Positions 11,648-63,383 of a stretch of 64,000 bases of DNA are shown here, one piece after another. Each line of letters begins with the position of its first letter. Positions within the stretch are counted from its first letter, which is position 1. Position numbers and translations under genes: made by a program. Origin of the DNA: Rebecca billardiae RCC1528 (lineage: Eukaryota > Protista > Haptophyta); assembly GCA_965240325.2 (NCBI GenBank), contig OZ251223.1, positions 2,790,001 through 2,854,000 of the forward strand, in the 5' to 3' direction. The notes beneath the pieces are model-generated. The model ran no database searches, had not been told where the DNA came from, and saw only the letters and a program-made list of their open reading frames with translations.

Positions 11648-11650
<3 letters not shown>

Positions 11651-13204: not shown

Positions 13205-13402
13205 GGCCTTGTGTCGCTGCAGGCGGCGGACGTCTCTCGCAGAGCGGCGTGCGATTTTTAACATTTTTTTTCCGCACGGCGCACGCGACGAAACCGCGCT
13301 GTTACGGTTTTTGAAGCCGATAACGATGGCGCTCTGCTGAGGTGTTGAGGGAGGGTCTTGGGTGCAACAGCTCCCTTCACTTCATCCGACGCGGACAACG
13401 AG

Positions 13403-15174: not shown

Positions 15175-18100
15175 ATGTCTGGGAGAGCTGGAGTGGGCAG
15201 CCGGCGTGGATCTGAGGCGAGCGTCACCGGGACCGATGACTCTGGGAGGTTTGACTGGAGCAAAGTCCGAGGCGTGGCACCCGGCGCGCAGCTGTCGGAG
15301 GCGAACGCGATCAAACGGCGCCTCGACATTCGTTACGAGCTGATCGACCCGTCCTGGCGAGCCAACGTGCGCTGGTGGATCGAGTCGTCGGTGACGGGCC
15401 GCATGTTTGAGCTCTCGCACTCGATGCTCAGCATCGCGTCGTGCGTGATGTACGTCATCTGGACGTACTACATCGAGGTGCCCGAATGGGAGTATCACCC
15501 GATTTTCAACATGACCGAAATCGTCTTCGTCCTCATCTTCCTCGTCGACTACCTCCTGCGCGTCGTCGGCTTTGGCATGCGGTACATGTTCTCGCTCAAC
15601 GGCATCGTCGACCTCGTTACGACCGTGCCGACACTCATCCCTCTGATGGCGGACTTTGAGCTGCTCTCGGCGACTTTCGACCTCGATTCGGAGGTGGCCG
15701 CTGACCCGAGCAACGAGCAGCAGTTCCTGTTCCTCCGCTTCCTCCGGCTGAACGTGCGCATCCTCCGCGCGCTCCGCTTCCTGCGCGTGCTGCGCACGCT
15801 GCGCTTCCTGCGCTTCACGCTCACCAATATCGAGCGCAACCAGAACGTGGGCGTGCAGCGGCAGATCACGGAGATCGTGCTCACGGCGCTCACGATCATC
15901 TTCTGCACCGCGTCGATGATCCAGATCCTCGACGTCGACGACCAGGGCTCGCACCTGCTCAACTGGCACGACGCGTTCTACCTGACGATCACGACCATCT
16001 CGACCGTCGGCTACGGCGACATTGCGCCCATCCGCGTCGAGGCGCGGCTCGTGATGTGCTTCGTCATCCTGCTCTCGCTCGTGCTGATCCCGCGGCAGAC
16101 GAGCCGGCTGATCAACATGTCGTCCGACCCGCCCGTGATCGGCAAGCTCCCCGGCTCCGACCGCTCGCACCTCGTGCTCACGGGCAACGGCGTGATGTCG
16201 CACGCGACCGTCTCGCAGTTCCTGCGCGCGCTGTACGCCAACGACACGGCGCGCACGCGCCGCCAGCTGCCGCACGTGGTGCTGCTGCACCCGAGTGCGC
16301 TGCCGCGCGAGCTGCGGAACCTGATCCAGCAGCGCCTCTTCCTCGACCGCGTGTCCTTCTTCCGCGGCTCCACGCTCGTCGAGGACGACATGCTGCGCGC
16401 GCGCGTGCGGTTTGCCGAGGCGGTGTTTGTGCTCGGGGACCCGGGCTGCGACGACGCGACACGGGAGGACGCCGCGTCGCTGATGATGGTGCTGGCGGTG
16501 CGCTCGTTCAGCCACGACGTGCCGTGCCTGGTGCAGCTGCTCTCGGGCAACTCGATCGGCGACCTCAACCTCGCGCTCGACCCGTCGTGGCCGCGCGTGC
16601 ACGCGGTGAACATCGTGGAGCTGAAGAACCTCATCCTCGCCAAGGCGTGCGTGGTGGAGGGCTACTGCACGTTCATCACCAACCTGCTCGTGCCGCCCGA
16701 CGCGTCGGCGGGGAGCCCGCTCGCGGCGCAGGAGGAGCGGTCGCACGGCGGCCGCGCGCTCACCACCGACTTCCTCGACGCGCTCGGCGAGCACCAGGAC
16801 GCGCCCGACACGGACTTTGAGCAGTACGAGCGGTGCGCGTCCAACCGGCTGATGCTGGCGGCCGTGCCAGAGGCGATGCACGGCATGCAGATCCAGACCG
16901 TCTCGCTCTGGCTGCGGCTCGACCTGGGCTCGACGCTGATCGCGGTGAAGAGCGCGGACAACTCGCGCTCGATCGACGTCGTGATCAACCCGTCGGTCGA
17001 GTACACGCTCACCGACGGCGACATCCTCTACATCGTGTCCACGGACGAGGAGGTGCCCAAGCGAGTGATGCGGCTGCAGACGGCGGCCGCGCGCGAGGAC
17101 GTGGAGGACGCGCTCGAGGGGCGCGTGGACGGCATGCGCGCGCGCGTCTGGCCGCACATCCAGCGGCTCAAGAGGCGCAGGGTGTCGTCCGTCGACGAGG
17201 ACAAGAGCCCCTGGAAGGCCATCTTCGACGCGAAGCGGCTCGTCAGGCGCCCGTCACCGCAGCAGCGCGGGGCCGGCTTCACAGTGCGCGTGCCGTTCCC
17301 GACGACGATGCCCTCGTTTGGCGCGGTCAGCTGGGGTGGCGGCGGGGGCAGGGAGAGCGGCAGCACGGCGGAGGATGGCGGCTCCGGCCGGCGCGCGCGC
17401 GCAGGCCGCTGGCCGGGCCGGCTCACCACCGAGGCGCACCCACGCGGCGGGCCGGGCGGCGCGCCCGAGCCGAGCTTCAACGCGTGGGAGGCGCGGTGGG
17501 AGGCGGACGGCCTGCGCGAGATGCTGCACTGGAAGGCGGAGCAGAAGGAGGCGCCGGTCATCGAGTCGGTCGAGCCCGCGGAGGTGGCCAGCTGGGAGAA
17601 CCACGTGATCCTCTCGGTCGACGGCGGCACGCTGGACTGGGGCGGCGTCGCCATCCTCGCGGGCGCGCTGCGCGTGTCCACCTCGTCCACGCGGCTGCTC
17701 GTGCTCACTTACGACGCGCCCGAGCCGCAGGAGTGGACGCTCGTGCAGCGCGCGTCCAAGACCGTGCACTGGATGAGGGGCAGCTTCGCGGCGAAGGGGC
17801 ACCTCGCGCGCGCCAACGTGCGCAGCGCGCACCGCCTGATGATCCTCGTCCCGCCGGTCTCGCAGCGCGCTTCGAGCAAGTCGAACGACCTCCACCTGGT
17901 GGACCAGCAGGCGGTGCTCACGTACTTGTCGCTCGACGCCGCGCTCGGCTCGGTCAAGAACCCGTGCATCGTCGAGCTGGAGTACCTGGAGAACGTGCGC
18001 TTCCTTCGGCCGGACAAGGCGAGGCAGACGTCGGAGCCGCCCCCGCGCGCGAACGGGCTGACGAGGCGCGCCGAGATCATCACCGACACGCTCACGCGCA

Positions 18101-36249: not shown

Positions 36250-37884
36250 TCAGTTGGTGACCGCCTGGCCAACCACGTGCCCCGTCGAGAGGATCATGGC
36301 GGCAAATCCAAGGCCGAGCAGCAGCGAGAACGCACGCTGCTCGAGCTCGACGGGGGCCGTGCTCTCAGAGCCGACGCCGAGGGAAGTCCACGTGTCCAGC
36401 CAGTTGTGCGCGCCTCGTCGCTCGCCGAGGCCCAGCCCGATGGCCGCGGGCACGATGTAGATGATGGTCGTGCCCAGGAGGGCGCCGCGCAGCGCGACGA
36501 CAAGCAGCATTTCAGACGCGCCCGCGAGCGCGAGCGATGTGGTCGTGACAAAGAGCGCGAGGGCGAGCCTTGTGTCCACCTCCTCCGAGGAGAGCCTCGG
36601 AGGCGGCTCGGCGGCCTCCCGCCGCGGCTCCTGCGAGGGCAGCGCGAAGGTCGGCGGCGGCAGACCCGCCACCGGTGCGCCGAGTGCGCCGGCCACCTGC
36701 TCGCCCACGTGGCCGGAGGTGAGCAGCCCGCGCAGCGCGAGCATCATCAGCAGGTACGACGACAGCACGCCCGCGGCGGTGGCGAGCTGCGCGCCCATCG
36801 CGAGCGGGTCGGACGGCGCGAACGAGCTCAGCGCGAAGTCGGAGACAGCGCCCGCGAAGAGCGAGTGCGACGCGCTGATCACTGCGCCGTACAGCAGCAC
36901 CGCCGCGCCGAACGCGCCCGCCGTCACGCCGCTGAAGCGCAGCGGCGTGCTGTCTTCGAGCTCAGCGTAGTAGCGCGGCACGTCGCAGTGGCACATGTAC
37001 GCAGTCGACATGGAGGCGACCACGGCGAGCCACGGGGCGGAGGCACCAGTGCTCGAGGCCGCGTGCGCCGACGCGTCCGAGACGGATGTCGCCGCAGCGA
37101 GCGCCGCGTCCGAGTCGTAGAAGTAGGCGCCGCCCGGGGCGTACGTGCCATCGCACGCGCGCGTCAGCACGAGGCCGACCGAGAGCGCCTTGGCGACGAC
37201 GCCGCCGATGGAGCTCGGCGTGAGCGAGGCGAGGTCACGCCAGGCGAGCACGCCGAGCAGCAGCGGCGGCGCCATCATGAGCACGGCGATCCGGTGCGGA
37301 TCCTCGGCGAGCCACGCGCTGTGCTCGTTGAGCAGTGCGGCAGCCGCGCTGTGCGCGACAAAGGGCTCGAGCAACTCGCCCAGCGCGATCTGGTACTGCG
37401 CGCACGAGCCGAGCGCGTACGCTGCCACGATGAGCTGCACGAGCTGCGCCGGTGCGCGCAGGGGCGGGCCTGCTTGCTGCCACAGCTCGTCGAGCGACTT
37501 GGCGCCGGTCCGCTCGCAGAACAGGCCAATGAGCGCAAAGGTCGCGGCAGAGCCCGCGCCCAGCGCCGCGAGGAAGCCCAGCGTCGTCAGGAGCGGCAGC
37601 TCGCGGGCCGATGCGGGGATGCAGAAGAGCCCTGTACCGATCATCATGTTGAAGATCGCGCCAGAGACTGCGAGCGGTGAGAGGCCGCGCGTCTCACTGC
37701 GCGAGGCGGAGCGCGCCGGCTTCCCGTCGACAGGCATCTCGAGCATTGCGGCGCACGCACGCGGGGCGCGCGCCGAGCGGACGGCCGACACGTGCGGCCG
37801 ATAGCCGTGGCCGGGCGCGCGAAGACCCGCCCCGCCCTGAGCGCACAGGGCGGCCGCGAGGACAGCGCACACCACGCGGCCCAT
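36250..37884 (-). CDS. Amino-acid transporter (AAAP/SLC38-like), possibly with a bipartite plastid-targeting presequence
   Basis: AIFNMMIGTGLFCIP TM1 motif, about 11 hydrophobic segments, AYMCH, and GALLGTTIIYIVPA. The N-terminus has a signal-like segment followed by an R/S/A-rich segment. Confidence 0.85.
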   Translation of the reverse strand: MGRVVCAVLAAALCAQGGAGLRAPGHGYRPHVSAVRSARAPRACAAMLEMPVDGKPARSASRSETRGLSPLAVSGAIFNMMIGTGLFCIPASARELPLLTTLGFLAALGAGSAATFALIGLFCERTGAKSLDELWQQAGPPLRAPAQLVQLIVAAYALGSCAQYQIALGELLEPFVAHSAAAALLNEHSAWLAEDPHRIAVLMMAPPLLLGVLAWRDLASLTPSSIGGVVAKALSVGLVLTRACDGTYAPGGAYFYDSDAALAAATSVSDASAHAASSTGASAPWLAVVASMSTAYMCHCDVPRYYAELEDSTPLRFSGVTAGAFGAAVLLYGAVISASHSLFAGAVSDFALSSFAPSDPLAMGAQLATAAGVLSSYLLMMLALRGLLTSGHVGEQVAGALGAPVAGLPPPTFALPSQEPRREAAEPPPRLSSEEVDTRLALALFVTTTSLALAGASEMLLVVALRGALLGTTIIYIVPAAIGLGLGERRGAHNWLDTWTSLGVGSESTAPVELEQRAFSLLLGLGFAAMILSTGHVVGQAVTN

Positions 37885-38061
37885 TCCGTTGGAATGGTAC
37901 CCGCCCACCTCCGCCCGGGCCGGCGGCGGCGGGGCGGCGGCGGCGCCTGGCTGGAGAGACAACTGGCTGCTGGGAGAATGATGGCTTATGGGCTTATGGC
38001 CAGGGTACATAATTGTATGGGGGTACTACCCACTTTTGAAGTTGAGTATTACTCATCCACG

Positions 38062-45540: not shown

Positions 45541-47481
45541 TCATTCATTGCTGAGCTTGTTCTTCGCCTGGACTATGTCGCCGATCGTGCGCAGCCCATG
45601 CGAGTAGTCGGCTGGGTCGAACTGCACCTCGAGCATGTTGCACGCATCGACGTATTGCGGCTTGTCGAGCTCGTCCATCGCGCTCTGGAGCTCCTCGACC
45701 GTGCGCACGACGGCCGACACGCCGTCGCCCTCCGCCTGGCCAAATGCGCGAGCCATCTGGGCGTACCGCCAGTTCTGGATCTCGTTGTAGTCGTTCTCAC
45801 CGGGCGGGCCGCGATGGATGGCCTTCTCGATCGAGTAACCAAAGTTGTTGAGCACGATGAAGGTGATCGGCAGCTTGTGCCGCACTGCCGTGCTCACCTC
45901 CTGCGCCGTCATCTGGAAGGCGCCGTCGCCGACGAGCACAACCGTGCGCCGCACACTGCCGTGCTGTCGGAAGAAGTCGCCGGGGATGGGCGACACCCAG
46001 TCGCGAGGCCGCTCGCGCGTGGCGAGCGCCGCGCCGACGGCTGCGGGCACGGTGTAGCCGATGGAGAGGTAGAAGGCCTGCGCGAGGAAGTAGTCTGACG
46101 GGCGCAGCGTCAGGTCGGTCGCGGCGATCAGCGAGTCACCCGCGTCAGCGAGCACCGTGACCGGCGTGGCTTGGCGGTGCAGCCAGCGGCCGACGGCGGC
46201 GATGAAGCCTGCGACGGTCACCTGCGCCTGCGGGTCCTCGGTCTCCGCGCCCGATCCGCTCGTGCCCGAGCCGTTCGTGCTCGGCTCACCGAGCGCGCGC
46301 CGGATGCTCACAGACTCGAGCGCGGCTGCGCGCGCGGCTGCCCACGTCCCCTCGCTGGTGAGCGCAGTGACGTCGCGCGCAGCCGAGTCGCCGAGCCGCT
46401 CAAAGAGGTCGGCGCCGAGCGCGTTGGCGAACGGAGCGAGGGCGACCGAGTGGTGCTGCCGCTCCTGCACCGGCGCGCTCGCGGACGGCTTGGCCCCCTG
46501 CACCCGCACGCAGCCGGAGTCGGCACGCACGACGAGCTGGCCCTCCTCGCCGAGCTTGGCCGTCATGAAGTCAAAGTCCGCCTGCGCCGCGCCCAGCACG
46601 AGCAGCACGTCGGCGCTCTCGACGTACGCGCGCACCGCGTCGCGGGAGAGGATCCCCTGGTACACGCCCGCACACATCGCCGAGCCCTCCTCGAGCGAGG
46701 TCTTGCCGTGCCGCGTCGTCGCCACGGGCACGCGCAGCATGCGCGCGAGGCGACGCACGGCCGGCTGGCACGAGCGGCGCTGCACCTCGACGCCGACGAG
46801 GATCGCGGGGCGGCGCGCGCCCAGGAGCAGGCGGGCGACCTCGGCCACCGCGTCGGTGCACGCGGCGGCATCGTGCGGCGGCGAGAAGTCCCACGAGGAC
46901 GCCGGCCGCTCAAGCAGCCGCTCGCTCGCCCCTGGGCACTCGGCCGCGGCCACGTCCATCGGCACCTCGAGGAAGACGGGCATCGAGTCTCGCACGCACT
47001 GCCGGAGCGTCTCATCGATCGTGTCCGCCGCGGCGGCTGGATCGAAGAGGATCGCCGACGACACCGTCACCTCCTTGTATGCGGTGTGCTCCGCGTACAG
47101 GTTGCCCACGAGGCCGTGGTGCGGAAACGAGTCTCCGCCGGGCTTGTAGTCCTGCACGCGCGGGGCGCCGACGACGTACACGGCAGGAACCATTTCGGCG
47201 CGCGCACCTGCCGCCGCGTTCAGGGCCGAGAAGCCGCCCACGCCGTACGTCAGGCACACGGCAGAGATCCCGTTCAAGCGCGCGTACGCGTCAGCCGCGT
47301 AGCCCGCGTTCAGCTCGTTGCACGTGCCGACCCAGCGGAAGCCCTTCTCGATAAAGCAATCGCACAGGTACAGCGAGTAGTCACCGGGCACGCCAAACAC
47401 GTGGCGAGAGCCCAGCTCACGCAGCCGCGACGCGAGGTAGCCGCCGACCGTCAGCGCGCGCCCACTTCTGGCCGCGGACAT
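45541..47481 (-). CDS. ThDP-dependent 2-oxoacid decarboxylase (pyruvate / indole-3-pyruvate decarboxylase family)
   Basis: VFGVPGDY, CNELNAGYAADAYAR, TYGVGGFSALNA, PHH, SIGY, and the ThDP motif GDGAFQMTAQE...LNNFGYSIE. Confidence 0.95.
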   Translation of the reverse strand: MSAARSGRALTVGGYLASRLRELGSRHVFGVPGDYSLYLCDCFIEKGFRWVGTCNELNAGYAADAYARLNGISAVCLTYGVGGFSALNAAAGARAEMVPAVYVVGAPRVQDYKPGGDSFPHHGLVGNLYAEHTAYKEVTVSSAILFDPAAAADTIDETLRQCVRDSMPVFLEVPMDVAAAECPGASERLLERPASSWDFSPPHDAAACTDAVAEVARLLLGARRPAILVGVEVQRRSCQPAVRRLARMLRVPVATTRHGKTSLEEGSAMCAGVYQGILSRDAVRAYVESADVLLVLGAAQADFDFMTAKLGEEGQLVVRADSGCVRVQGAKPSASAPVQERQHHSVALAPFANALGADLFERLGDSAARDVTALTSEGTWAAARAAALESVSIRRALGEPSTNGSGTSGSGAETEDPQAQVTVAGFIAAVGRWLHRQATPVTVLADAGDSLIAATDLTLRPSDYFLAQAFYLSIGYTVPAAVGAALATRERPRDWVSPIPGDFFRQHGSVRRTVVLVGDGAFQMTAQEVSTAVRHKLPITFIVLNNFGYSIEKAIHRGPPGENDYNEIQNWRYAQMARAFGQAEGDGVSAVVRTVEELQSAMDELDKPQYVDACNMLEVQFDPADYSHGLRTIGDIVQAKNKLSNE

Positions 47482-47768
47482 CTTGACCACCGTCGTCGCC
47501 GTGAGCCGCGCTCGACGAGTCCTCCGCCGCCGCCGCGCTGCGCCGGCCGCCGCGGTTGGAAGAGCCACTTTCACTTGGACCGATGCAAAGGCCGAGAAAA
47601 CGGCGAGAAACAGAAAATCGACTCGAAAGTCGAAATACCGCGCCAACGGCCGTCGGGTCGGGTTTTGATCTGATCAACATCACGGCATACACCGATTCGA
47701 CCCTCGCTGCGCGCGTGCGCCGCAGCCCTCGAAGCGCGGCGTCGTACTGGACGACGGCAGCCGAGCAG

Positions 47769-50940: not shown

Positions 50941-53311
50941 GTGCCCACGGCGCACGGGCGCAGCGACGCGTGCTGCGCGCGGTGTGTATCATCGCGGCGG
51001 AGGGGGAGAGAGCCGCGCGCGCGGAGCAGCACCCGCGTGCGGCGCCGCAGCAGTGGCGCCACAGCAGTGGCCGTCGCGCGAGGTTGCGGCCGTGGCCGGC
51101 GCGTGTGCCTGGCCGCGCGCACCGCCCCACTCACACTGCTGACAGTGCGTGTGGCAGGTGTGGCCGGGTGCGTGGCCGTGTGCCGCGTGGGCGTGGGCGC
51201 GCGCGCAATCACTAATCAGGCAGGCCGCAGGGACTGTGCTGGCGTAGCAGTGGTAAGCAGCGGTGACTGCGGTGAGGCGCGCGGTAAGTACCGTTGTGGC
51301 GTGGGCTGACGGTGAGTGACACCTCCGCCGACCGCCGGTGCGGCCCGCGTGAGAGTGATAACCGCATATTCACATCCTCCAATTCCTCCCTCTCTCTTTC
51401 CTTTCTCCCTCTTTTTCCCTCCCTCTTCTCCCCCTTCTTCCTCCCTCTTCCTCCCTCTCTCTTTCCCTTTTCGCGCCGTCGCAAAGTTAAAAATGGAGTC
51501 CACCCCCTGTTACCGGCCAAAGATCTCCGATCGCCATCATCGGCTTCTCGGGCTCTGCAGCCGTGGCGCGGGCATCCAGCCATGTCGCGTCCTGCGTCGC
51601 CGGCGGCTGCGGCTCGCACGCGGGTGGCGCGTCGCGTGCACCGACCAACATCTTTCGGCAACGTCTTTCGGCGGTAAGCAACGCTCCGCATCGCGCCCCC
51701 TCGCGCTTCGGGCCGTCGCCTCTTCTCCGCGTGCGCACCCGCGCGCTGCGGTCTGCTTTGTCGTATTCCCGAGCACCGTTCCCTCTTCGCAACATGCCTC
51801 CTCCTCCGTGGGTGCGCCCCCACGCGGATCGCTGCTCCATCTCTCCCGCCCTGCCTCGGGATCGCCCCGGTGCCAACGCCAGCCGGCTCCGACACAAGGA
51901 CCGCTGGCGGCACACCGCGCGACCGGGCCCCGTGCGCGTCCGCGGGCCATTCACAGCATCCGCGAAGGCCGTCTAGCCTTCTCCTGCTTCCGCAGCGCCG
52001 CGCCCGCGGGGCCGGCTGCCTGCTATCTCTCCTCCTCGGGTTCCGTCTCACTCGCACTGCCCCGCCTGCCCAGCCCCCGCTGGCCGGCCCTCGTGCGTGC
52101 GCGACTCACACGTGCCTCGCCCCTTCTCCTCCCTACGCTCAATGGGATTCTACTCCACGCGACCACGCGGTGCTCCCCAACACACCATGAAACGGGATCT
52201 CTCACGCACCGCGTCTCGTCGACGGCGAGCGGCATGCCCACCGCATCTGCTGCCGCTCGCCTTTGCATGAGGACACGTAAATCCCACTGAGTAGGAACAC
52301 AGGCAGCCGCCTCGGCATCGACATGCCAGGCGGCGTGCCCACCTTCGGCCAGCAGTTGGCGTCGGCGTTCGCGAGGACGGCTAGACGTGGGGTTATTGGT
52401 ACAATAACTGATTGTCTAAGAGGACGACACGGACGCCAGGCGCCAGCGCCGCTCATCAGCTCCATCGCCCTCTACCGGACCATGGCCTCAACGAGCTGCT
52501 CCCGGACAAACTCAGTCCGTCCGGCATTTTCTGTTACCGGCCAAAGATCTCCGATCGCCATCATCGGCTTCTCGGGCTCTGCAGCCGTGGCGCGGGCATC
52601 CAGCCATGTCGCGTCCTGCGTCGCCGGCGGCTGCGGCTCGCACGCGGGTGGCGCGTCGCGTGCACCGACCAACATCTTTCGGCAACCCGCCCACCCAGGG
52701 CCCGTTGGTCTGGTGCTCGGGCGGCGGGATCACAACACCCGCCGTCCGACCGCCCGGTCTTGCGGCGCTGCACTTAGGGCTCATGCGACCCCCTGCGTCC
52801 CAACACGGTTGGGTTTTTCAGGTTAGGTCCCCAGCAGCGCTGCTCCCGGGCGGTCAGGTGGAGGTTCATTGTCGACGAGTCCGCAGGCGCTCAGCCTTCC
52901 GTCAGCGGACGTCACGGAGCGGGATCTCTCACGCACCGCGTCTCGTCGACGGCGAGCGGCATGCCCACCGCATCTGCTGCCGCTCGCCTTTGCATGAGGA
53001 CACGTAAATCCCACTGAGTAGGAACACAGGCAGCCGCCTCGGCATCGACATGCCAGGCGGCGTGCCCACCTTCGGCCAGCAGTTGGCGTCGGCGTTCGCG
53101 AGGACGGCTAGACATATATATATATTCGATTATTTATGCGTAAGCAGACGCGTAGTAGACGTAGTCCGAGTCGTCTTATCCGTAGCACTGGCGGTTACTA
53201 ACTATATCGCGCCTGCAGCTGCTATAGCGCTTATTATTAACGTATATGTAAGTAGCAGAATTTGTCACAGCGTCGCGTAGCCGGACGTTCCGGCCATGCC
53301 GTGCGGCCTGC

Positions 53312-55065
53312 TCACGGCCGTTGCGGCAGGAGCGGGTTGGGCAGGTGGTCGGGGTCCTCCCGACGCGTGCACTGCAGCACCGCGTCCGGCTTCCCGGGCG
53401 CCGCACGGGCGAGCTGCAGCCGCTTGGCCGCCGCACGCTCGAGCTCACGCACAAGCGCGTGCCCCGCACTCGGCCGCTGCGCCGCGCCGGGGACGGGCAC
53501 GCCGCGGCCTGCCTGGTGGTAGAGGAGGTGCCAGCGCGCGCGCGCGAGGCCGCGGCGCATGCGGTCGATCCGCTCAGGCTCGTCCCGCTCGATGGCCTGC
53601 AGGAAGAGCAGTGGGTTGACTGTCGCCGGGTCGTTGAGCCGGGCCTGGTACTCCAGCAGCGCCTGCGCTGGCACCGAGATCGAGATCTCGGCCCAGTCGA
53701 CCACCGAGGGGAAGGGCAGGAAGGTGAGATCGATCACAAAGACTGCGCACATTGGGGGAGGGGGAGAGGAGGGGCCCAGCTGAGCGCCGCGTGCCACTCG
53801 TGCAGCGACCTCGCCGCCATCTCCCGCGCGCGCACAGCGCGCGCGCGCCCCCGTTCGAACCGCGCGTGCGCGCGTGCGCGGCGCTGCGCACCCGGGATGC
53901 AGAGCGCCGCCACGATGGAGAAGATGCGCGTGGTGATGGCGGAGTCGCCCGCGGGGACGGCGCAGAAGGTGGACGCCTTGTACACGTCGGCCTTGCGACG
54001 CAGCGTGCGCTCGAGCTGGGCCCCCTGGTACTGCCTGTCGTTGCGGTACGTCTCGAGGGCCATCGCGTTGGCGCCGTACGTGGCGGTGAGGTTGTTGACC
54101 GCCCACGAGACGATGCCGCGCAGCCGGTGCGCCTCCTGCATGCGCACGTCCTCGCAGCCCCAGAAGCGCGGCCGCGCGGCGAGGTCGAAGCGGTGGCACG
54201 GCGGGCTCTTCTTGCCCCACGTCACCGCGTTGCTCGAGATCACCAGCGTGCGCTTGAGCGCGCGCAGCCGGGCGGGCGCCTCCTCCTCGTGCATGAAGAA
54301 GGGCGGCGAGTAGTACGGCGCGAGCACGGCGTGGCCGCACGCGCGCGCGCCGCGCCAGTCACGCCGGCGGTCCTCGGCGGTGACGATGATGCCCTGGCCC
54401 ATCCGCGCGTACAGCCCGCGCGGCGCGCCGTACCGCCCGACGTCCGCCTCGAGCGCCGCGCGCAGCACGTGCGAGAGCACAAACGGGAAGACGTGCCGCT
54501 CAGGCGCGCCCTTCCACTCGGCGGTGCTGAAGAGCCAGCGCAGCACGCGCTCGAAGGTCGGGCACGTGACGTTGCCGTAGTGGTACTTGGCGAGGCCCGA
54601 GGCGTACGCGTCGTACATCGAGCGCTGGATCGAGAGCGGAATCGCGCCCTTGGGCACGGCGTACGTGGCGCCCCACGTGACGCCCGCCATGTCCGTCGCC
54701 TTGCACAGGTGGTACGGCGACGCGGGGAGTAGGAAGAGCACGCGCGACGCGCGCGCGGGCTGGTCGTCGCCGCCTGGGCGACGTGGCACGTACGGCGGCA
54801 TGATCCGCTGCAGCTCGCGGATCGTCTCGTGGTACAGCCCGCCCTCGTCGTGCGCGGGCGGCGGGTCGGCGTCCATCACTTCGCGGTACCGCCGCTCAGC
54901 CTCGGCCGAGACGCCGAGGGCGCGGTACGGCACGTCGTGCACGAAGAGCTGCCACGGCGCACCGCTGGCGTCGAGGCCCGCCGGGTGCGGCTCCAGCCCG
55001 CGCACCGCCGTGCGGGCTGTCACGGCCCACGCCAGCACGAGCACCGCGAGCCGTTGCGCCGCCAT
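53312..55065 (-). CDS. Exostosin-family (GT47) glycosyltransferase; intron 53743-53891
   Basis: N-terminal signal/anchor. STFCAVPAGDSAITTRIFSIVAALCIP|VFV..LPFPSVVDWAEIS is the GT47 signature. Confidence 0.88.
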
Positions 55066-55254
55066 CGTCGCCCGAATTTTAACAGCGCAGGCTAAATACG
55101 TTCAAAGTATCACGCACGCGGCACGCCCCAATATACGCAGCAAATGATTCGTTCGTATCAATAAAGCTGGAAAGCGTCGCGCCGCGTGACTCGTGACGGG
55201 CGCTCGGCGTGGCGCGGGTGCCACTGCGGAGCGTGCTTGGGCAAAGACCACTCG

Positions 55255-57399
55255 TCACTTCCTGGTCCACTTCCTGCCCTTCAGATTGATCTGGATCCCG
55301 CCGCCAGGCTTGCGCGCGGGCGTCTCGAGGTCGCTTGGATCGTACTCCCCCGCAGCGCCGACGGCATCGCTGCTGCGCATCGGATCGGCAGCGCCATCGC
55401 CGCCCGCGCCGCCCTCGTCATCCGGCCCGGCTGCGCCCTGCCGCAGCTGCAGCTGCGCGCCCAGCCCGCCCTGCGCGCCGGCGAGAGGCGGCTGCGTCTC
55501 AAAATCGGTGGGCGCCGCCTGCGTGCGCGACAGCAGGCCCATGTGCTGAGCTCTCGCGGCCGCCTGCGCGTTGCGCGCGACCGCGGCGTGTGCGGCGCGC
55601 ACGTGTCAGCAGGTGCGCCGCGGGGCTCACACGGCGCGCTCCCGTGGGCGAAGGCGCGGCACGCACCGTGCTGGCCGCGTTGGCCTGGGCCCTCGCCCGC
55701 TTCGCGATGACGGCCGCCGCATGGTCCGCCCCGTTGGCGCCCGCAGGCGCCCCCTCGCCGCGCTTGCGCTTGCGGTCGCGCGTCTGCCGGCGAGACGGCC
55801 GCACGTGCGCGGGCAGCTCGGCGCGGCGTGCGAGCACGGCGTGCACGCCCATCGACTCCTCGTTCCACGCCGTCTGCTCGGTGAGCATGCCGCAGAACTC
55901 GCGCACGGCCGGCGTGAAGTGCACGCTGCGGTCTTCGTACGCAGGGTCCAGCCGCGTCTTGATCCCCAGATAAAAGGACGACGACCACGCGCCTGCGCAC
56001 CGAGCGCGCGCGGGCGGCGTGCACGGCGTCGCGAGCTCAGCGGTGCGCGGTGCGGCGCAGCGGCGCGGGTGGGTTGGCGGCGGCTGGGCTCGCGGCGCGC
56101 ACCGTGCGTCGCGTAGGGGCAGGGGACGGGCTTCGGGTAGGGGTGCACCACCTCGACGTGCGGCAGCACCTCGAGCTTCTTCATCAGGTGCCTGAGCTTG
56201 CTCTCGATCGTGCCCTCCCAGCGGCGGTGCTCATCCTCCGTGTGCGCCATCGCCTCGATCAGCACAAACCGATCGTGCGCGGCGAAGAAGTCGACGGGCT
56301 CGAAGAGCGTGGCCCACTCGTCGTCCCCGTCCTCGACGGCGGTCGCGATCCGCAGCCCGCGCTCGAACTCCTCCTTGAGCACGCGCAGGTTCGAGTACGT
56401 CAGGTTGAACGTGCTGTTCATGCACGGGTAGCACGGCGTGATCACGGGCATCAGGTCAAAGCGCTCGCGCGGGTACTTCTTCGGGTTCCACACCTTCAGC
56501 CCGAGGTTGAGAGAGCCCTCGGTGATGGGGCAGAGGAGGATCGGCACGGGCGGCGGCGAGTTGGGCGCGCGCGCCAGGTCGGCGAACTTCCAGTGCGAGT
56601 ACACGCGGAAGAAGCGCGCGAGCAGCGTCGCCGGGCACGCGTTCGGGTAGAGCTGGCACACGCGCGCGGTCAGCAGCGCCCACGCGACGCCGCCCAGGAA
56701 GCCGAGCGCGTTCGAGTAGATGCCGCGCTTCTTGGCCCAGAGCTTGATGCAGCGGAGGGTGGTGCGGAAGTTGGGCACGGACGGCACGAGCGAGAGGATC
56801 GCCGACGCGACGCGCGTGCCGTTCAGCGAGCGCACCGTCGGCTCGTCGATGCCCTTGAGGTGGCGCTCCTCGATCTGCAGGTCGTCCGGGATGGCCGACA
56901 TCGCGAGCCGCGCAAACAGCAGGTCGATGGGGATGCCGTCGAGCTCGAACTTGATGATCGGCACGTATGCCGTGGGCACGGGGTCGAGCTCGCGCACGTC
57001 CGGCTGCTCGCGCAACAGCGCCGTCATGTGCTCGAAGAAGTGGTTGCGGTGGATGTGCTCGGGCACGACCAGCAGCGTGTCAATGTCCGCGCCGCTCGCG
57101 TGCACACCCAGGCGGTACGAGCCGAAGGTGAAGATCTTGGCGCCCGCGGCGGCTGCGATCTCGCCTGACATGCCGCTCGCCATCGACGCGCGGCGCACGA
57201 ACTCGCGCGCGAGCGTGTTCAGCCGCCCGAGCACCTGCACGCGCTTGGTGGCCTCCTCGTCCGACTCGTACAGGTTGTGCGCGCGCAGCAGGGCCTCGAG
57301 CCGCGCGGAGAGTTGGAGCTCGCGCGCGGTGGGCTGCGCGAGGCTGATCGGCTGCGTGATGCCATACCGCTGGTCCTGCGCGGGCACGCCTTGATCCAT
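55255..57399 (-). CDS. PAP1: Canonical nuclear poly(A) polymerase; introns 55993-56102 and 55564-55666
   Basis: YGITQPIS, KIFTFGSYRLGVH..GADIDTL, AYVPIIKF, RSLNGTRV, IKLWAKKRGIYSN..GFLGGV and MPVITPCYPCMNS. Confidence 0.96.
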
Positions 57400-57553
57400 C
57401 GCGCCGTCTCCAAGCAAGTCCCTCGCAAAAAGTGTCAGCACAGGGTCGCCGCCATCGTTGCGGCCGGTCCGGGGGGGTACAGTTCGTCAGTACCACTGGT
57501 AGGGCAGCCCGGACTGAGCAACCGTGCACCTGTGCCCTCACGGCGCGGCCGTG

Positions 57554-59291
57554 ATGACGCACGACGACGCCAGCAGCTTCGAGCTGCTCGACGAGGACCC
57601 ACGGCACCGCAGCAGCGCGCGCAAGCTTGCTCACGACACCTCCTTCCGCGCGGCGATGCTCGCCCAGCCGCCGCCCGAGCGCGCTCTCGAGCGCGTGCAT
57701 GTGGACGATCTACCGCCCGGCGCTTTCGTGGAGCAGTACGTTTCGCGCGCGCGACCGTGCGTGCTCGTGGGCGCGACGCGCGGCTGGGCGGCGAATGAGA
57801 TGTGGGGCTCAGCGAGCAGCTTCGTCGCCGCGCACGGCGACGTGCCCTTCAAGGTGACCGCCCTCCCGCGCGAAGACGGCGCGCCGGGTGGCGACGTGGT
57901 CCGGCTGAGCATCCGCGCGTTTGCCGAGTACGCGCGCAGCACCGAGGCGGACTTCCCGTGGTACATGTTTGGCGACGACTTTGAGGGCCCGCGCGCGGCG
58001 CTCGCCGCCGAGTACGCCGTGCCGGCCGTCCTCGACGGCGAGGACGCGCTCGACGCGTCCGCGCTCGCTCGGCGCTTCATGGCCAGGCACAAATACATGG
58101 TGATCGGCGGAGAGCGCACCGGCTCGCTGCTGCACGTGGACCCGCGGATGACGGGCGCGTGGAACGCGCTGCTGTGCGGCACGAAGCGCTGGGTGCTGCT
58201 GCCGCCGTCGGAGACGCCGCCCGCCGGCGCGAGCGGCACGATGGGCGCGCTGCCCGACACGGGCGCGGCGGCGGCCGGGCCGGCGGCGTGGTGGCGCGAC
58301 GAGTGCCCGGCGCTGCTGGCGAGTGTGCACGGCGCCGGCGCGCTCGAGGCGGTGCAGCAGCCGGGCGAGATGCTGTGGGTGCCGCACGGGTGGTGTCACG
58401 CCGTGTACAACCTCGGCGAGCTCACCGTCGCCGTCACGCACAACCTGCTCCCGTGGGCGGCGCTGCCGGCGCAGATGGGCGCGCTGGGCGTGCGCTACCC
58501 CGCGCTCGGCTCCTACCTGCACGCGCTCGCGCGGAGCAGCGGGCGCGAGGAGGTGGCGGCGCGGATGGAGGCGGCGGGCGAGGTGCCCGTGCGGCCCGTG
58601 GACGACGAGGACGACGACGAGGAGGAGGAGGACGCCGAGGACGAGTCCCACGCCGAGCCGAGCGCGCTGCGCGAGAGCTCGCACGCGCGCTCGTTCGCAG
58701 CGCGCGGCCTGAGCGCCGAGTTCCACCACCTGGCAGCGGTCGGCCACTTCCCGGACTACTGGCGCGCGGCGCAGCGGCTTGCGCGCGCGGGCGGCATGGC
58801 GCCCGGCCCGCCGCTGGCGGCCGTGAGCGCGTGTGCGGCGGCGCGCGCGTGGGAGATGCCCTTCTCGCCGCTTGCGCTGCGGCTGCGGCGGCCGCCTCTG
58901 CGCGCCATCATGCTGCCTGCCGTCGAGCGCAAAGCGCGGGGCGAGCGCACCGCGCTGCTCGCGGGCGGGTGCCCGCACGCGAGCTGCCTGCCCTTCGAGC
59001 GCATCAGCGTCGCGCTCCGTCCGGTCGGCGCCGCGCCCCCGCCGCACGCGTGCGCGGCTGCGGCCTCGGCCCCGAGCGAGGCCTCCGCCTCCGCCTCCGC
59101 CTCCGCCTCCGCCTCGCTCAGCATTGAGGGCGCCCTGCGCGACGTGAGCCTCAACTACCACGCGGGCGCGGGCGTGGAGGCGCTGCGAGCGCAGCTCGAG
59201 GCGCTGCAGCGCAGGCTGCACGCGCCCCCGGCGTCGGCGGCGGGCGGGGCCGGCGCGGCACTGCCGCCGCGCGCAGCGCGCAAGCCGGACC

Positions 59292-59335
<44 letters not shown>

Positions 59336-60496
59336 GCCGCGCCGCCCTCGGCCGCGCCTCCGTTCGAGGTGAGCGTGACGGGCGGCAACTCGGACGCGCT
59401 CGTCAAGGTGGTCGAGCTGCTCTCAGAGCCGGGCGACGCCGTGCTCGTCGAGGCCTTCTCGTACCCGTTCACGCTGTCGATGTGCGCGAGCCGCGGGCGC
59501 GTGCTGGTGGGCGTGGCCCTCGACGGCCACGGGCTGAGCGTGCACGCGCTGCGCGCCGCCGCGCGCGCGCACCCGGCCGCGCGCGTGCTGATCGTGACGC
59601 CGAGCGGGCACAACCCGACGGGCGTGAGCTACTCGGCACAGCGCCGGTACGAGGTGTACGCCGCGTGCCGCGAGCTCGGCCTCGCGATCGTCGAGGACGA
59701 CCCGTACTGCCACCTGCACACGCCGCTCCCGCCGAGGCTGGGCGCGCGCGCCGACGGCGCCGCGCGCGCGCCCGCGCGCGCGTGGAGCGCCGCCGAGATG
59801 CGCGGCCTCGTGCCGTGCGGCGTCGCGGGGCAGCCGCCGTCCTTCCTCTGCCTCGACGCGGACCCCAGGCTGCGCCACCCGACCGACGCGCCGAGCGGCC
59901 GCGTGATCCGGCTGGACTCGTGCTCCAAGGTGCTCGCGCCCGGGCTGCGGCTCGGCTGGCTGAGCGCGCCCGCGCCGTTCGTCGACCGCTTCCGCCAGCT
60001 GTCCGAGGGCAGCACGCAGCACCCGTCCGGCCTGTCCGAGGCGGTGGTGAGCGAGCTGCTGCGCACGTGGGGCGACGCCGGGCTCGACGCGCACCTGCGA
60101 GCGCTGCAGCTCGAGTACACGCGCCGGCGCGACGTGCTGCTCGGCGCGCTGCACGCCGCGTTCGCGCCCGAGGCGGAGTGCGGCCACCCACCGCTCGCGC
60201 GCTGGGAGGCGCCCGAGTACGGCATGTTTGTGTGGGTGCGGCAGGAGGTGCACGCGGACACGCGCGAGCTCGCCGAGCGGCTCGCCGCCGAGGGCGTCGT
60301 CTGCGTCCCCGGCGCTTTCTTCGCGCCGCCTCAGGCTGACGCCGCGAGCGGCGGGCTGCTCTACCCGGACAGCGCGTGCGTGCGGCTCACGTTTGCGTCC
60401 GCGTCCGACGAGGAGATGCGCGACGGCTGCGAGGCGCTCGCGCGCGTGCTGCGACGGCCCACCAACCCGGCGGCGGCGGGCAGCGCACAGCCCTAG
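57554..60496 (+). CDS. Fusion protein: JmjC (JMJD6/JMJD4-like) Fe(II)/2-OG dioxygenase + class I/II PLP aminotransferase (AADAT/Aro8-like)
   Basis: JmjC motifs GSLLHVDP, AWNALLCGTKRW and QQPGEMLWVPHGWCHAVYN. Aminotransferase motifs LAGGCP, PSGHNPTG, IVEDDPY, RLDSCSKVLAPGLRLGW, GMFVW and VRLTFA. Single ORF. Confidence 0.88.
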
Positions 60497-60791
60497 GCCA
60501 CCGCCCGACCGCGGAGGCTCGCCGTCGCGCAGAGAGACTTCAGTTGACTGTTACAGACTGTAATAGTAGCCGGTCCAAGAGTGACGCACATTCAACATAC
60601 GTACATTATAGCGCAGCTCAAGGCACTGATGAACAGGCACCGCCCTTGATTCAGCAGTCCGGTGGGGCAGGCGCGTGCGCTGCCGCCGGATTTCTGAGTT
60701 TGACCAATGCAACCGCTGCGCACACCCAGTGCGTGCGCCGCGGAGCTCTCCCGGCTTGGTGGACCAGTGCACGACGAAGCGCTCCCGACCG

Positions 60792-63383
60792 ATGCCAGCC
60801 CCCCCTCCTTCCAGACGCGCCCACGCGCTGCCCGCCGTGAACGGCGTGCACGCCCTTCCCAAGAAAGCGGGCACGCTCTCTGCGAATCTCGCCGACGGCG
60901 TTGCTGCCGCGAAGGCGCTCCTCGGCTCCGATGACGACGAGACCGGCCTGTGCACGCGCGCGGCCGAGCTCGTGCGCAAGCGTACAGAGCTCGCCGGCCG
61001 CGGGTCGTCGCACCGTGCCGAGCGGACGGCGGCCGAGCTCGACGCGCGTGTACGGCGCGAGCTCGAGATCGCTGAGACGGCGGCGTCCAAGGCGGAGGCC
61101 GAGCTCATGAGTGCGACCGTCGGCTCTGAAGCCCGTCTCGCCGCCGCGACCGAGCTCGCAGAGCTGCGCACGTCCGAGGCGGCCGAAGCCAAGAGAGTGT
61201 CTGACGCGGCGTCCCAAGCCCGAGCAAGCCGCGTGTCGAAGCTCGAGGCCGCGCTACTAAAGGGCCTGACCCCGCAGCTCAAGCGCGAGATGGGCGCGCA
61301 CCACCGCGCGGCGCACGAGGCGCAGCAGGCGGAGGTCGACCGGCTGCAGGAGGCGTGGGAGGAGGCGAACGCCGCGTCGGACACGCACAACCTCAAGGGC
61401 GATCGAAAGTGGAGCGACACCGGCGGGCGGATGACGCACTCGCAGACGAAGCCTGTGATCCAGGCGCTCAAGCGCAGGGGCCAGATCGAGGAGCAGCTCA
61501 CCGCCGCCCGGCAGAAGCTCGACGAGCTCGCCGCCAAGATGCGCGCGACCCCGAGCGACGCCGAGATCGCCTCATTCCTCAACAAGCACTTCGAGGCGAA
61601 GGAGCACGAGAAGGCGGAGGTGGCGGCGCGGAGCAAGCTGGGCGTGGCGGAGAAGCTCGCGCGCAAGGCGAAGGATGAGCTCGTCGCCGCCGAGGCCGAG
61701 GCCAAGCAGTCCGCAGCCCTCGCCGACGAGGCGCGCGCCTCGCTCGCCGCCGCCGAGGCCGACATCGCCGCGCTCGTGGCCGATGGCGGCGCCTCGGCGC
61801 GCGAGCGGCTCGGCGCGGAGGTTGCAGAGCGGGTGGCGCGCGAGATGGCGGCGGAGCTGGAGGCCGTGGCCGACGAGACGTCCAAGGCGGCGGAGCAGCT
61901 CCGCGCTCAGCTCCGCGCCGCCTTCGACGCGATCGGCGCGCTCTCGGCCGCCGAGAAGCCGCGCACGTCCGCTCTGCTTGCTGCCGAGGAGGGCGCCGCG
62001 GGTGCGCCGCCGCCTCTGGACGAGGCCTTCTGCGAGGCGGCGCGTGCCGAGGCGGCGGGCTGCCTCGCGTTCCTCAACCTGCACCAAAAGCGCCTGCAGG
62101 CCGAGGCGGCGGCCCTCACGGCGCGCGAGAAGGAGGAGAAGCGCGCGGCGAAGGAGCGCGCGGCCGCCGAGCGTGCCGCCAAGCGCGCCGCCAAGGCGGG
62201 CAAGGCGCCGCCCACCGGCCCCGCCCCACACGACCCGCCGGGCGAGCACGACGACGATGACGATGACGACGATCATCAAGACCCGGCGCCGACGCCGCCT
62301 CGCCAGCCGCTCGAACCAGCGCGGCAGCCGACGGTGCCGCCCGCCCAGCCGACGCCCCAGCCCCAGGCTCCAATCGCGGCGCCAGCGCCCACCGCCGCGC
62401 CCGCACCGCCCGCGGCCCCTCATCGGTCTGGGGCCGCCCGGGCGCAGACGGCAGAGGCGCCGTCGTCGCAGCCGGCGGCGCCGTCCGCCTCCCTCGAGAT
62501 GCCGATGCCGGGCCGTCACAACGAAATGCCGATGCCCGGGCACCATGACGGGATGCCCATGCCTGGCCATCAGCTCGCGCAGGCCGGGCTCTCGCCGACG
62601 CTCTCGCCGCCGGCAGTGCCCGCGCGGCCGGCGCCGCAGCCGGCGCCGCAGCCGGCGCCGCAGGTGGCCCAGGAGCTCTTCGCGGCGCCCGCAGGCGGGA
62701 TGGGCGGCCTCGCATTCGGCGCGTTCTCGCAGCCCAAGCCCGACGCCGCGGCGCTCAACGGGCACTCGCTCTTCGCGGGGGTCCCAGCGTCGCTCCCGAT
62801 GTCGCTCCCAGCGACCGAGGCAAGCACGACGGCCGCGCCGCGCGCCACCGCCGCCGCCTCCGCCGACGCGAGCACGTGGCAGGAGGTGAAGCACGCCGAG
62901 ACGGGCAAGACCTACTGGTGGAACACCGCGACCGGCGAGACGCGCTGGTTCGACCCCGCGGTGGACGTGTGGACGGCGGTGCCCGCCGCGTCGGGCCTCA
63001 CCTACTGGTGGAACAAGGCCACGGGCGAGACAACCTGGGAGATGCCGGCGTCGCTGCGCGGCGGTGGCGCGGCGGGCGGCGGGCCGCCCGCCCCTCCCGC
63101 GCCGGCGGTGCCCGCGCCCGCGCCGGCGGTCGTCGCCCCGTCGGCGGCACCGGTGATCCCCACGCCAACGCCGGCACCGATCTCGCCGCCGCCGGTCGTA
63201 CCCACGCCTGCGCCAGCGCCGATCGCGCCTGCTACGCCCGTGGTGCACACGCCCGCACCGCCCCCGGCGCCCGCGCCGGCCGCGCCGGCCGGCGCGTGGA
63301 GCTGCCACGTGTGCACCTTCGAGAACGACAAGCCGCACGCACTGGCCTGCGAGGTGTGCGGCAGCACGCGCCAGTTCAACTGA
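60792..63383 (+). CDS. Coiled-coil protein with a Pro-rich linker, two WW domains and a C-terminal RanBP2/NZF-type zinc finger
   Basis: WQEVKH.ETGKTYWWN..TGETRWFDP, WTAV..SGLTYWWN..TGETTWEMP and WSCHVCTFEN....CEVCG. Confidence 0.85.
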   Translation: MPAPPPSRRAHALPAVNGVHALPKKAGTLSANLADGVAAAKALLGSDDDETGLCTRAAELVRKRTELAGRGSSHRAERTAAELDARVRRELEIAETAASKAEAELMSATVGSEARLAAATELAELRTSEAAEAKRVSDAASQARASRVSKLEAALLKGLTPQLKREMGAHHRAAHEAQQAEVDRLQEAWEEANAASDTHNLKGDRKWSDTGGRMTHSQTKPVIQALKRRGQIEEQLTAARQKLDELAAKMRATPSDAEIASFLNKHFEAKEHEKAEVAARSKLGVAEKLARKAKDELVAAEAEAKQSAALADEARASLAAAEADIAALVADGGASARERLGAEVAERVAREMAAELEAVADETSKAAEQLRAQLRAAFDAIGALSAAEKPRTSALLAAEEGAAGAPPPLDEAFCEAARAEAAGCLAFLNLHQKRLQAEAAALTAREKEEKRAAKERAAAERAAKRAAKAGKAPPTGPAPHDPPGEHDDDDDDDDHQDPAPTPPRQPLEPARQPTVPPAQPTPQPQAPIAAPAPTAAPAPPAAPHRSGAARAQTAEAPSSQPAAPSASLEMPMPGRHNEMPMPGHHDGMPMPGHQLAQAGLSPTLSPPAVPARPAPQPAPQPAPQVAQELFAAPAGGMGGLAFGAFSQPKPDAAALNGHSLFAGVPASLPMSLPATEASTTAAPRATAAASADASTWQEVKHAETGKTYWWNTATGETRWFDPAVDVWTAVPAASGLTYWWNKATGETTWEMPASLRGGGAAGGGPPAPPAPAVPAPAPAVVAPSAAPVIPTPTPAPISPPPVVPTPAPAPIAPATPVVHTPAPPPAPAPAAPAGAWSCHVCTFENDKPHALACEVCGSTRQFN

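What the first reader, a model, noticed from the sequence alone, without database searches (positions are those of the whole stretch)
57554..60496. JmjC dioxygenase fused to a PLP aminotransferase, both with intact catalytic residues
Seen in sequence: the JmjC facial triad HxD (about 58133-58141) and distal H (GWCHAV, about 58394-58405), plus the 2-OG-binding Lys (GTKRW). An acidic linker follows, then a complete AADAT/Aro8-like aminotransferase with NPTG, DDPY, the PLP lysine (SKVL, about 59924-59935) and the terminal Arg (VRLTF). Established knowledge: JmjC enzymes consume 2-oxoglutarate, and these aminotransferases interconvert 2-OG and glutamate. Inference: the fusion could supply or channel 2-OG, couple hydroxylation to nitrogen status, or perform two steps of a modified-amino-acid pathway. 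I do not recognise it as a characterised architecture.
Basis: partly seen in the sequence, partly recalled or inferred. Interest (0 to 1): 0.75.

Follow-up and report, generated by a model that had tools for sequence, protein, structure and literature searches.

The report
Species-specific JmjC oxygenase–aminotransferase gene fusion
In this very GC-rich pavlovophyte alga, two ordinary enzyme genes (a JMJD6-like oxygenase and an AADAT/Aro8-like aminotransferase) have been joined end to end into one reading frame, but the nearest relatives keep them as separate, unlinked genes, so it looks like a young one-lineage fusion and not a conserved enzyme design.

Summary
One open frame (ATG 57554 to stop 60494-60496, + strand, 980 aa) carries a JMJD6-like JmjC/Cupin_8 domain and an AADAT/Aro8-like class I aminotransferase. 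All checked catalytic residues are present in both.

The join is real as DNA. Third-codon-position GC stays at 0.85-1.00 across the linker but falls to 0.57-0.75 in the flanking intergenic DNA. Two independent Logan assemblies reproduce 57400-59107 with no indel or stop.

The join sits where two genes once ended and began. In two relatives the JmjC gene stops at this point (L004, L007). In Diacronema lutheri and another relative the aminotransferase is a free-standing 528-542 aa gene with other neighbours.

No JmjC+aminotransferase protein appeared among the best 150 of 13,591 hits in 1.84 billion representatives, in the word searches, or in two full-text paper searches.

So this is a lineage-specific fusion in a pavlovophyte haptophyte. 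2-OG channelling has no support.

No RNA run was listed, so a single mRNA and protein remains inferred. Interest is modest.

An earlier scan note on another piece of this genome (s1-341025) describes a tyrosine/homogentisate cluster. That bears on the aminotransferase's likely role.

The parts
57554..60496 (+). Whole fused coding sequence, 980 codons plus stop, apparently a single exon
   Evidence: ORF list. GC3 is 0.85-1.00 throughout, against 0.57-0.75 in flanking intergenic DNA. Collinear with homologues, with no frame break.
57554..58588 (+). JMJD6-like JmjC/Cupin_8 oxygenase domain (aa 1-345)
   Evidence: Pfam. PDB JMJD6 E 6e-28. AF2 model has pLDDT mostly 85-98 over aa 1-345. Foldseek to JMJD6: E 4e-24, TM 0.75-0.78.
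58133..58141 (+). Fe(II) ligands His194-x-Asp196
   Evidence: Invariant in A1 and nearly invariant in A4. Aligned to JMJD6 HID.
58184..58186 (+). 2-OG-binding Lys211 (GTKRW)
   Evidence: Invariant or nearly invariant. Aligned to JMJD6 Lys204.
58397..58399 (+). Distal Fe(II) ligand His282 (GWCHAV)
   Evidence: Invariant. Aligned to JMJD6 His273.
58589..58669 (+). Acidic, predicted disordered linker (aa 346-372; Asp/Glu run at 58601-58645)
   Evidence: pLDDT about 50. Also acidic in standalone relatives P0003, P0006 and P0037. Three of the 5-6 haplotype substitutions fall here.
58685..58780 (+). Conserved C-terminal tail of the JmjC protein (aa 378-409, three predicted helices). In relatives it is the extreme C-terminus.
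   Evidence: Aligned to the last residues of P0003 and P0037, which are followed by TAG (L004 1181-1183) and TGA (L007 500-502). Helices 376-412 in the model.
58781..58798 (+). Fusion junction: five bridging codons (ARAGG), then in-frame ATG 58796-58798 (Met415). This is the likely former aminotransferase start (MAP..., as in relative P0001).
   Evidence: No stop and no GC3 dip here. Identical in Logan contigs L012/L013.
58796..60493 (+). AADAT/Aro8-like class I PLP aminotransferase (aa 415-980)
   Evidence: 53-56% identical over its full length to standalone P0001 and P0012. Pfam PF00155. PDB AADAT E 1e-41.
59927..59929 (+). PLP-binding Lys792 (SCSKVL)
   Evidence: Aligned to AADAT Lys263. 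Coordinates.
59081..59332 (+). Low-complexity inserts in the aminotransferase N-terminal part (Ala-Ser run 59081-59110; Pro-Ala run 59294-59332)
   Evidence: The Pro-Ala run is absent from P0001. The Logan contigs break in the Ala-Ser run.
55627..57399 (-). Upstream divergent neighbour: poly(A) polymerase. It shares a 154-nt intergenic region with the fusion gene.
   Evidence: Pfam. Exact protein P0160.
60675..63383 (+). Downstream neighbour ORF with WW domains and a RanBP2-type zinc finger
   Evidence: Pfam.

Best explanation
This is one uninterrupted, probably single-exon gene in a pavlovophyte haptophyte. It joins a JMJD6-like Fe(II)/2-oxoglutarate oxygenase (aa 1-409) to an AADAT/Aro8-like PLP aminotransferase (aa 415-980).

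Origin: two formerly separate genes came to lie head to tail, and the JmjC stop codon and the spacer in front of the aminotransferase start were lost. The old C-terminus now runs through five codons straight into the old start Met. This happened in this lineage only.

Product (inferred): a protein of about 105 kDa. Its two catalytic domains fold separately, joined by a disordered acidic linker and a short helical tail, and most likely keep their separate ancestral activities. The aminotransferase, like its relatives, would dimerise and so bring two oxygenase domains together.

Shown: DNA continuity, a coding signature across the join, intact catalytic residues, and separate genes in relatives.

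Inferred: a single mRNA and protein, independent activities, and the deletion mechanism.

The aminotransferase is most plausibly an aromatic-amino-acid or 2-aminoadipate : 2-OG transaminase. This is a weak lead, based on its D. lutheri orthologue lying beside HGD and HPPD.
For: 1. Coding signal across the join: frame-specific GC3 is 0.85-1.00 in every 20- and 40-codon window from 57524 to 60496, including 58544-58960. It drops to 0.57-0.75 just outside the ORF. A codon model trained on the two domain cores prefers the ORF frame in the linker by 0.6-1.1 nats per codon, and shows no preference in the flanks.

2. No room for a spacer: only 15 nt separate the end of the conserved JmjC tail from Met415. 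Tandem genes here and in D. lutheri are 160-300 nt apart.

3. Independent assemblies: two Logan assemblies (ERR14847151, ERR14847148) reproduce 57400-59107 with 5-6 substitutions, no indel and no stop.

4. Relatives end and begin at the join: the JmjC genes end with a stop there (L004 TAG, L007 TGA). The aminotransferases start there (P0001 MAPDPN..., P0012) and have different neighbours. One assembly (ERZ4290864) holds both as separate contigs.

5. Outgroups are standalone: aminotransferase P0013, and roughly 400-aa JmjC proteins P0004-6 and P0019.

6. Catalytic residues are intact in both halves.

7. The JmjC half folds confidently as a JMJD6-like domain with a disordered linker.
Against: There is no transcript or protein evidence: no RNA run was listed and read laying could not be used. 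Two in-frame ATGs (58796 and 58856) with G at -3 could start a free aminotransferase from an internal transcript. The 26 codons from 58781 to 58855 are Ala/Gly/Pro-rich with high GC at all three positions, so their coding periodicity is weak. The fusion is not conserved in any relative found, so selection for the joined state is unproven. The haplotype differences in the JmjC half are mostly non-synonymous (4-5 of 5-6), but they are too few to interpret.
Confidence: 0.68

Rival explanations
1. One open frame but two products. The aminotransferase is mainly made on its own, from an internal transcription start and Met415 or Met435. The long fusion protein is minor or absent, so functionally these are still two genes.
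For: The ancestral start (MAP..., as in P0001) is retained in frame with a purine at -3 and G at +4. All relatives express the two as separate genes. ORF continuity alone is weak evidence at 78% GC: my arithmetic gives a random stop frequency of about 1% per codon.
Against: The JmjC reading frame has no stop before 60494, so any JmjC mRNA that reaches a normal 3' end encodes the fusion. There is no non-coding spacer for a 3'UTR or promoter, and no GC3 dip.
Confidence: 0.18
2. One reading: a functionally coupled bifunctional enzyme. Either the aminotransferase supplies or channels 2-OG to the JmjC site, or the two domains catalyse consecutive steps on one modified amino acid.
For: Both half-reactions involve 2-OG (established knowledge). 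Both active sites are intact. Oxygenase plus PLP-enzyme pairs exist in amino-acid tailoring pathways; weak sub-threshold NCBIfam similarity to MppQ, VioD and GntC reflects the shared fold.
Against: The fusion is not conserved. Orthologues are unlinked in D. lutheri and in two other relatives. In their usual directions both enzymes consume 2-OG, and 2-OG is an abundant metabolite. The JmjC domain is closest to JMJD6, which acts on proteins. The aminotransferase is much closer to AADAT (146 bits) than to MppQ (95 bits).
Confidence: 0.1
3. An assembly artefact or a decaying pseudogene: the join is a mis-assembly or a dead read-through.
For: Repetitive low-complexity stretches lie inside the gene and break short-read contigs.
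Against: The junction (58781-58798) is identical in two further assemblies of other read sets. There are 980 codons without a stop or frameshift relative to homologues, strong codon bias, and all catalytic residues are kept.
Confidence: 0.04

Closest known systems
JMJD6 (human; PDB 3K2O, 3LD8, 6GDY, 6MEV), an Fe(II)/2-OG-dependent JmjC protein hydroxylase
   Same: Same fold, and by far the best structural match: Foldseek E 4e-24 and TM 0.75-0.78, with the next family at about 5e-12. Sequence E 6e-28. The HxD...H triad and the 2-OG Lys/Asn are conserved.
   Different: Only 26-32% identical. It belongs to a separate clade of roughly 400-aa algal or protist proteins that are 35-46% identical to it. 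It has its own acidic linker and a helical tail shared only with Pavlovales relatives. It is fused to an aminotransferase. Substrate unknown.
AADAT / kynurenine aminotransferase II (PDB 2QLR, 4GDY) and fungal Aro8 (4JE5, 6HNB)
   Same: Best solved relatives: E 1e-41 and 9e-36. The PLP Lys, Asp, Asn, Tyr and both Arg residues are conserved. The N-terminal LAGG-P motif is present.
   Different: Three low-complexity inserts. An N-terminus tied to another domain, whereas in KAT II the N-terminal arm helps form the partner subunit's active site (established knowledge). Substrate untested.
Diacronema lutheri KAG8469183.1 (P0012) and Logan protein P0001: standalone orthologous aminotransferases
   Same: 53-56% identical over the full length by BLASTP (62% in the core), with the same inserts.
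   Different: They are free-standing genes of 528 and 542 aa with other neighbours: an EF-hand gene upstream and histidine phosphatase/HGD/HPPD downstream in D. lutheri, and peptidase M3 upstream in L001.
Other fusions of these two families seen in the big search
   Same: Each family takes part in gene fusions: JmjC-JmjC tandems (P0023, P0033, P0106, P0120), an aminotransferase tandem (P0015) and RNA ligase-aminotransferase (P0070).
   Different: None combines JmjC with an aminotransferase.

Membership tests
JmjC / Cupin_8 Fe(II)/2-OG oxygenases | Profile match above the curated threshold | tested here: met
   PF13621 57.4 bits (cut-off 27.4); PF02373 34.9 bits (cut-off 24).
JmjC / Cupin_8 Fe(II)/2-OG oxygenases | HxD/E...H facial triad | tested here: met
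   H194, D196 and H282 are invariant or nearly invariant in A1 and A4, and align to the JMJD6 ligands.
JmjC / Cupin_8 Fe(II)/2-OG oxygenases | 2-OG-binding Lys and Asn on the DSBH strands | tested here: met
   K211 and N204 align to JMJD6 K204 and N197.
JmjC / Cupin_8 Fe(II)/2-OG oxygenases | Double-stranded beta-helix fold | tested here: met
   AF2 model with pLDDT mostly above 85 over aa 1-345. Foldseek top hits are all JMJD6.
JMJD6 orthologue (protein lysyl hydroxylase) | Orthology with, and the substrate of, JMJD6 | tested here: inconclusive
   JMJD6 is the closest solved protein, but identity is only 26-32%. Many standalone proteins are closer, at 35-46%. No tree was built. Activity cannot be tested with these tools.
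Class I PLP aminotransferase, AADAT/Aro8 (KAT II) group | Profile match above threshold, with closest solved relatives in this group | tested here: met
   PF00155 77.7 bits (cut-off 19.7). AADAT E 1e-41, Aro8 9e-36, MppQ 5e-26. No NCBIfam equivalog reaches its cut-off.
Class I PLP aminotransferase, AADAT/Aro8 (KAT II) group | PLP Schiff-base Lys plus the Asp, Asn and Tyr that hold the cofactor, and the Arg that binds the substrate carboxylate | tested here: met
   K792, D715, N687, Y718, R799 and R944 align to AADAT K263, D230, N202, Y233, R270 and R399.
Class I PLP aminotransferase, AADAT/Aro8 (KAT II) group | Amino-acid substrate (2-aminoadipate, kynurenine or aromatic) | not testable with these tools
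   The only lead is context: the D. lutheri orthologue lies one gene from HGD and HPPD. That context is not seen in L001 or L020.
Conserved bifunctional (Rosetta-stone) architecture JmjC + aminotransferase | The same fusion present in independent lineages | tested here: not met
   No fused relative in the whole-protein word search. None in the best 150 of 13,591 hits among 1.84e9 representatives, in the JGI metagenome scan, or in the Atlas look-alikes. The nearest relatives have separate genes.
Conserved bifunctional (Rosetta-stone) architecture JmjC + aminotransferase | One mRNA and one polypeptide | not tested
   No RNA run was listed, so read laying could not be used.

The most novel reading that the evidence does not exclude
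The fusion is selected and marks a real metabolic link. Under this reading, the JMJD6-like clade found in these algae acts on a free amino acid or on the aminotransferase's substrate or product (for example an aromatic or basic amino acid). The single chain would then carry out hydroxylation and transamination as consecutive steps, or tie oxygenase activity to the local 2-OG/glutamate balance.
Probability: 0.08. Interest if true: 0.7.

Novelty: new variant of a known kind. Interest (0 to 1): 0.33.

Why it matters
If the fusion protein is made, it is a natural construct that tethers a 2-OG-consuming oxygenase to a 2-OG/glutamate transaminase. I found this architecture in no database or paper, so it would be a convenient test of whether proximity changes JmjC activity. 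It is also a clean, datable example of how a streamlined, stop-codon-poor genome of about 70% GC creates new multidomain genes by losing the short spacer between neighbours. As it stands, it is confined to one lineage and no functional coupling is shown, so it is more a curiosity of genome evolution than a new enzyme principle.

Tried and rejected
- RNA evidence: the look-up of sequencing runs (kind rna) listed no run, so read laying could not be used.
- Exact look-up of the 980- and 990-aa proteins: not in the collection.
- JGI metagenome scan: only a 27%-identical bacterial aminotransferase.
- Synteny through the neighbouring poly(A) polymerase: PAP loci of four relatives carry no JmjC or aminotransferase, so the order of the rearrangements could not be reconstructed.
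- Context of the more distant aminotransferase P0013: no metabolic neighbours.
- Full-length MAFFT alignments A2 and A3 put the JmjC-only sequences under the aminotransferase half. They were not used, so no full-length fold was made. Only aa 1-469 were folded.
- The bacterial promoter/terminator scan is uninformative for a eukaryote.
- Atlas search: only aminotransferase clusters, with scores of 0.80 or less.
- Two paper searches for the domain pair found nothing relevant.
- Rejected: MppQ/VioD/GntC-type membership. Scores are far below cut-offs, and AADAT is much closer.

Full report
**What is there**

The window is about 70% GC. The region holds one open frame, 57524..60496 on the + strand, with its first ATG at 57554 (980 aa).

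- Pfam finds Cupin_8 and JmjC in the N-terminal third and Aminotran_1_2 in the C-terminal part, all above gathering thresholds.
- Against solved structures, the N-terminal part matches only JMJD6 (E 6e-28).
- The C-terminal part matches human AADAT/KAT II best (E 1e-41), then fungal Aro8.
They are invariant or nearly invariant among relatives.

**Which organism**

- The divergent upstream neighbour is a eukaryotic poly(A) polymerase, and the downstream ORF has WW and RanBP2-type zinc-finger domains. Other ORFs in the window are ordinary eukaryotic genes.
- The PAP is 77% identical to that of Pavlova gyrans.
- The closest aminotransferase is KAG8469183.1 of Diacronema lutheri. Its assembly GCA_019448385.1 is named as D. 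lutheri in bioRxiv 10.1101/2025.06.04.657860.
- D. lutheri has 73.25% GC, and 45% of its genes have a single exon (PMC8379373).

The window therefore comes from a pavlovophyte haptophyte. A single-exon gene of 2.9 kb is unremarkable in such a genome.

**Is it one coding sequence?**

An open frame alone proves little at 78% GC, so I looked for a non-coding spacer.

- GC at the third codon position, in the ORF's frame, is 0.85-1.00 in every window from 57524 to 60496, including the linker (58544-58960). It falls to 0.57-0.75 immediately outside the ORF on both sides.
- A codon model trained on the two domain cores prefers the ORF frame in the linker by 0.6-1.1 nats per codon. It shows no preference in the flanks.
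- Two Logan assemblies from other read sets (ERR14847151, ERR14847148) cover window 53096-59107. Within 57400-59107 they differ from the window by only 5-6 substitutions, with no indel or stop. The junction is therefore not an assembly error.

**Where the join lies**

- The closest JmjC relatives share a conserved tail with the window (window 58685-58780). This holds for P0003 (L004) and for P0037 (L007, from assembly ERZ4290864, which also carries the D. lutheri aminotransferase).
- In both relatives the gene then ends: with TAG after six more codons in L004, and with TGA immediately in L007. Lower-GC non-coding sequence follows.
- The closest aminotransferases are free-standing. P0001 (542 aa, L001) starts MAPDPN... 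43 nt from a divergent peptidase M3 gene. P0012 (528 aa, D. lutheri) starts 185 nt after an EF-hand gene.
- In the window, the tail ends ...AAQRL, then come five codons (ARAGG), then an in-frame Met415 followed by APGPP... (58796).

The old C-terminus and the old start are thus only 15 nt apart. Tandem genes here and in D. lutheri are 160-300 nt apart, so there is no room for a 3'UTR plus promoter.

**Polarity of the event**

- P0001 and P0012 are 68.5% identical to each other and 53-56% identical to the window's aminotransferase. The more distant P0013 (39-41%) is also standalone.
- The wider JmjC clade consists of standalone proteins of about 400 aa.

Parsimony therefore favours a single fusion in the window's lineage.

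- PAP loci of four relatives have no JmjC or aminotransferase beside them. The 21-kb D. lutheri aminotransferase locus has no JmjC.

The genes are unlinked elsewhere.

**Is the architecture known?**

- The whole-protein word search found only the standalone aminotransferase.
- The exhaustive HMMER search of 1.84 billion representatives gave 13,591 hits. A relative with both domains would add both scores and rank near the top. All long proteins among the best 150 turned out to be JmjC-JmjC, aminotransferase-aminotransferase or RNA ligase-aminotransferase.
- The JGI scan, the Atlas look-alikes and two full-text searches found no such fusion.
- Distant, unrelated JmjC+aminotransferase fusions ranked below the top 150 cannot be excluded.

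**How it probably works**

- An AlphaFold model of aa 1-469 gives a confident JMJD6-like domain (aa 1-345). It is followed by a disordered acidic stretch (346-372), then three helices of moderate confidence (376-412) that end at the join.
- JMJD6 is the closest fold by twelve orders of magnitude in Foldseek E-value.

I read the product as two autonomous catalytic modules on one chain. By analogy with AADAT (established knowledge), the aminotransferase half is a dimer and would pair two oxygenase domains.

Nothing indicates coupling:
- In their usual directions both reactions consume 2-OG.
- The orthologues are unlinked in relatives.
- JMJD6 acts on proteins.

One functional lead concerns the aminotransferase alone. 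In D. lutheri its orthologue lies one gene from homogentisate dioxygenase and a bona fide HPPD (PDB E 1e-116; TIGR01263 above its cut-off). This suggests an aromatic or tyrosine transaminase. An earlier scan note (s1-341025) reports a tyrosine/homogentisate cluster on another piece of this genome. The context is not shared by L001 or L020, so the lead is weak.

**What remains open**

- No RNA run was listed, so a single transcript and protein is inferred, not shown.
- In-frame Met415 and Met435 could start a free aminotransferase from an internal transcript.
- The 26 codons after the tail are Ala/Gly/Pro-rich, and their periodicity is weak.

**Verdict**

This is a real, lineage-specific gene fusion of two ordinary enzyme families. 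The architecture appears undescribed. There is no evidence that the join has functional meaning.

Noticed in passing
L008 (Diacronema lutheri JAGTXO010000003.1) 10001-15840: The standalone aminotransferase orthologue (10001-11587) is followed by a histidine-phosphatase-family gene, then homogentisate 1,2-dioxygenase (12658-14136, - strand) and HPPD (14284-15840, + strand; E 1e-116 to plant HPPD). This looks like a tyrosine-catabolism neighbourhood in a haptophyte.
   Followed up: partly
window 58396 (codon 281): The window has Cys in GWCHAV, next to the distal Fe ligand. Logan contig L013 has T>G here, giving Trp (GWWHAV), which is the family consensus. L012 keeps Cys. This is a polymorphism at a conserved position. 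Three further differences fall in the acidic linker (58609, 58621, 58623).
   Followed up: partly
L004 340-460: The closest JmjC relative (P0003) seems to lack about 80 residues of the N-terminal half. The N-terminal motif (...RPCVL...) is in another frame, and a TGA (398-400) precedes the called ORF. This could be an intron, exon skipping in an RNA-derived contig, or a degenerate copy.
   Followed up: no
L007 1-50 and 630-676: This 676-nt ENA contig is flanked by Nextera adapter sequence. The first residues of P0037 (MCIRDS) are adapter-derived, not protein.
   Followed up: no
proteins P0023, P0033, P0106, P0120, P0015, P0070: Other fusions of the same families exist in public data: tandem JmjC-JmjC proteins of about 700-760 aa, a tandem aminotransferase of 951 aa, and a T4-type RNA ligase fused to an aminotransferase (861 aa).
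   Followed up: no
window 55627-56080 (- strand): The last 140 or so codons of the poly(A) polymerase ORF (P0160, 590 aa) are Arg/Ala/Pro-rich low complexity with no Pfam match. Relatives' PAP genes are split or have an intron near this point (L015 7224-8279, L019 3527-3919).
   Followed up: no
window 45544-47673 (- strand) and 36253-38025 (- strand): A thiamine-diphosphate enzyme (all three TPP domains) and an amino-acid transporter (Aa_trans) lie 10-20 kb upstream of the fusion gene. No link to it was tested.
   Followed up: no
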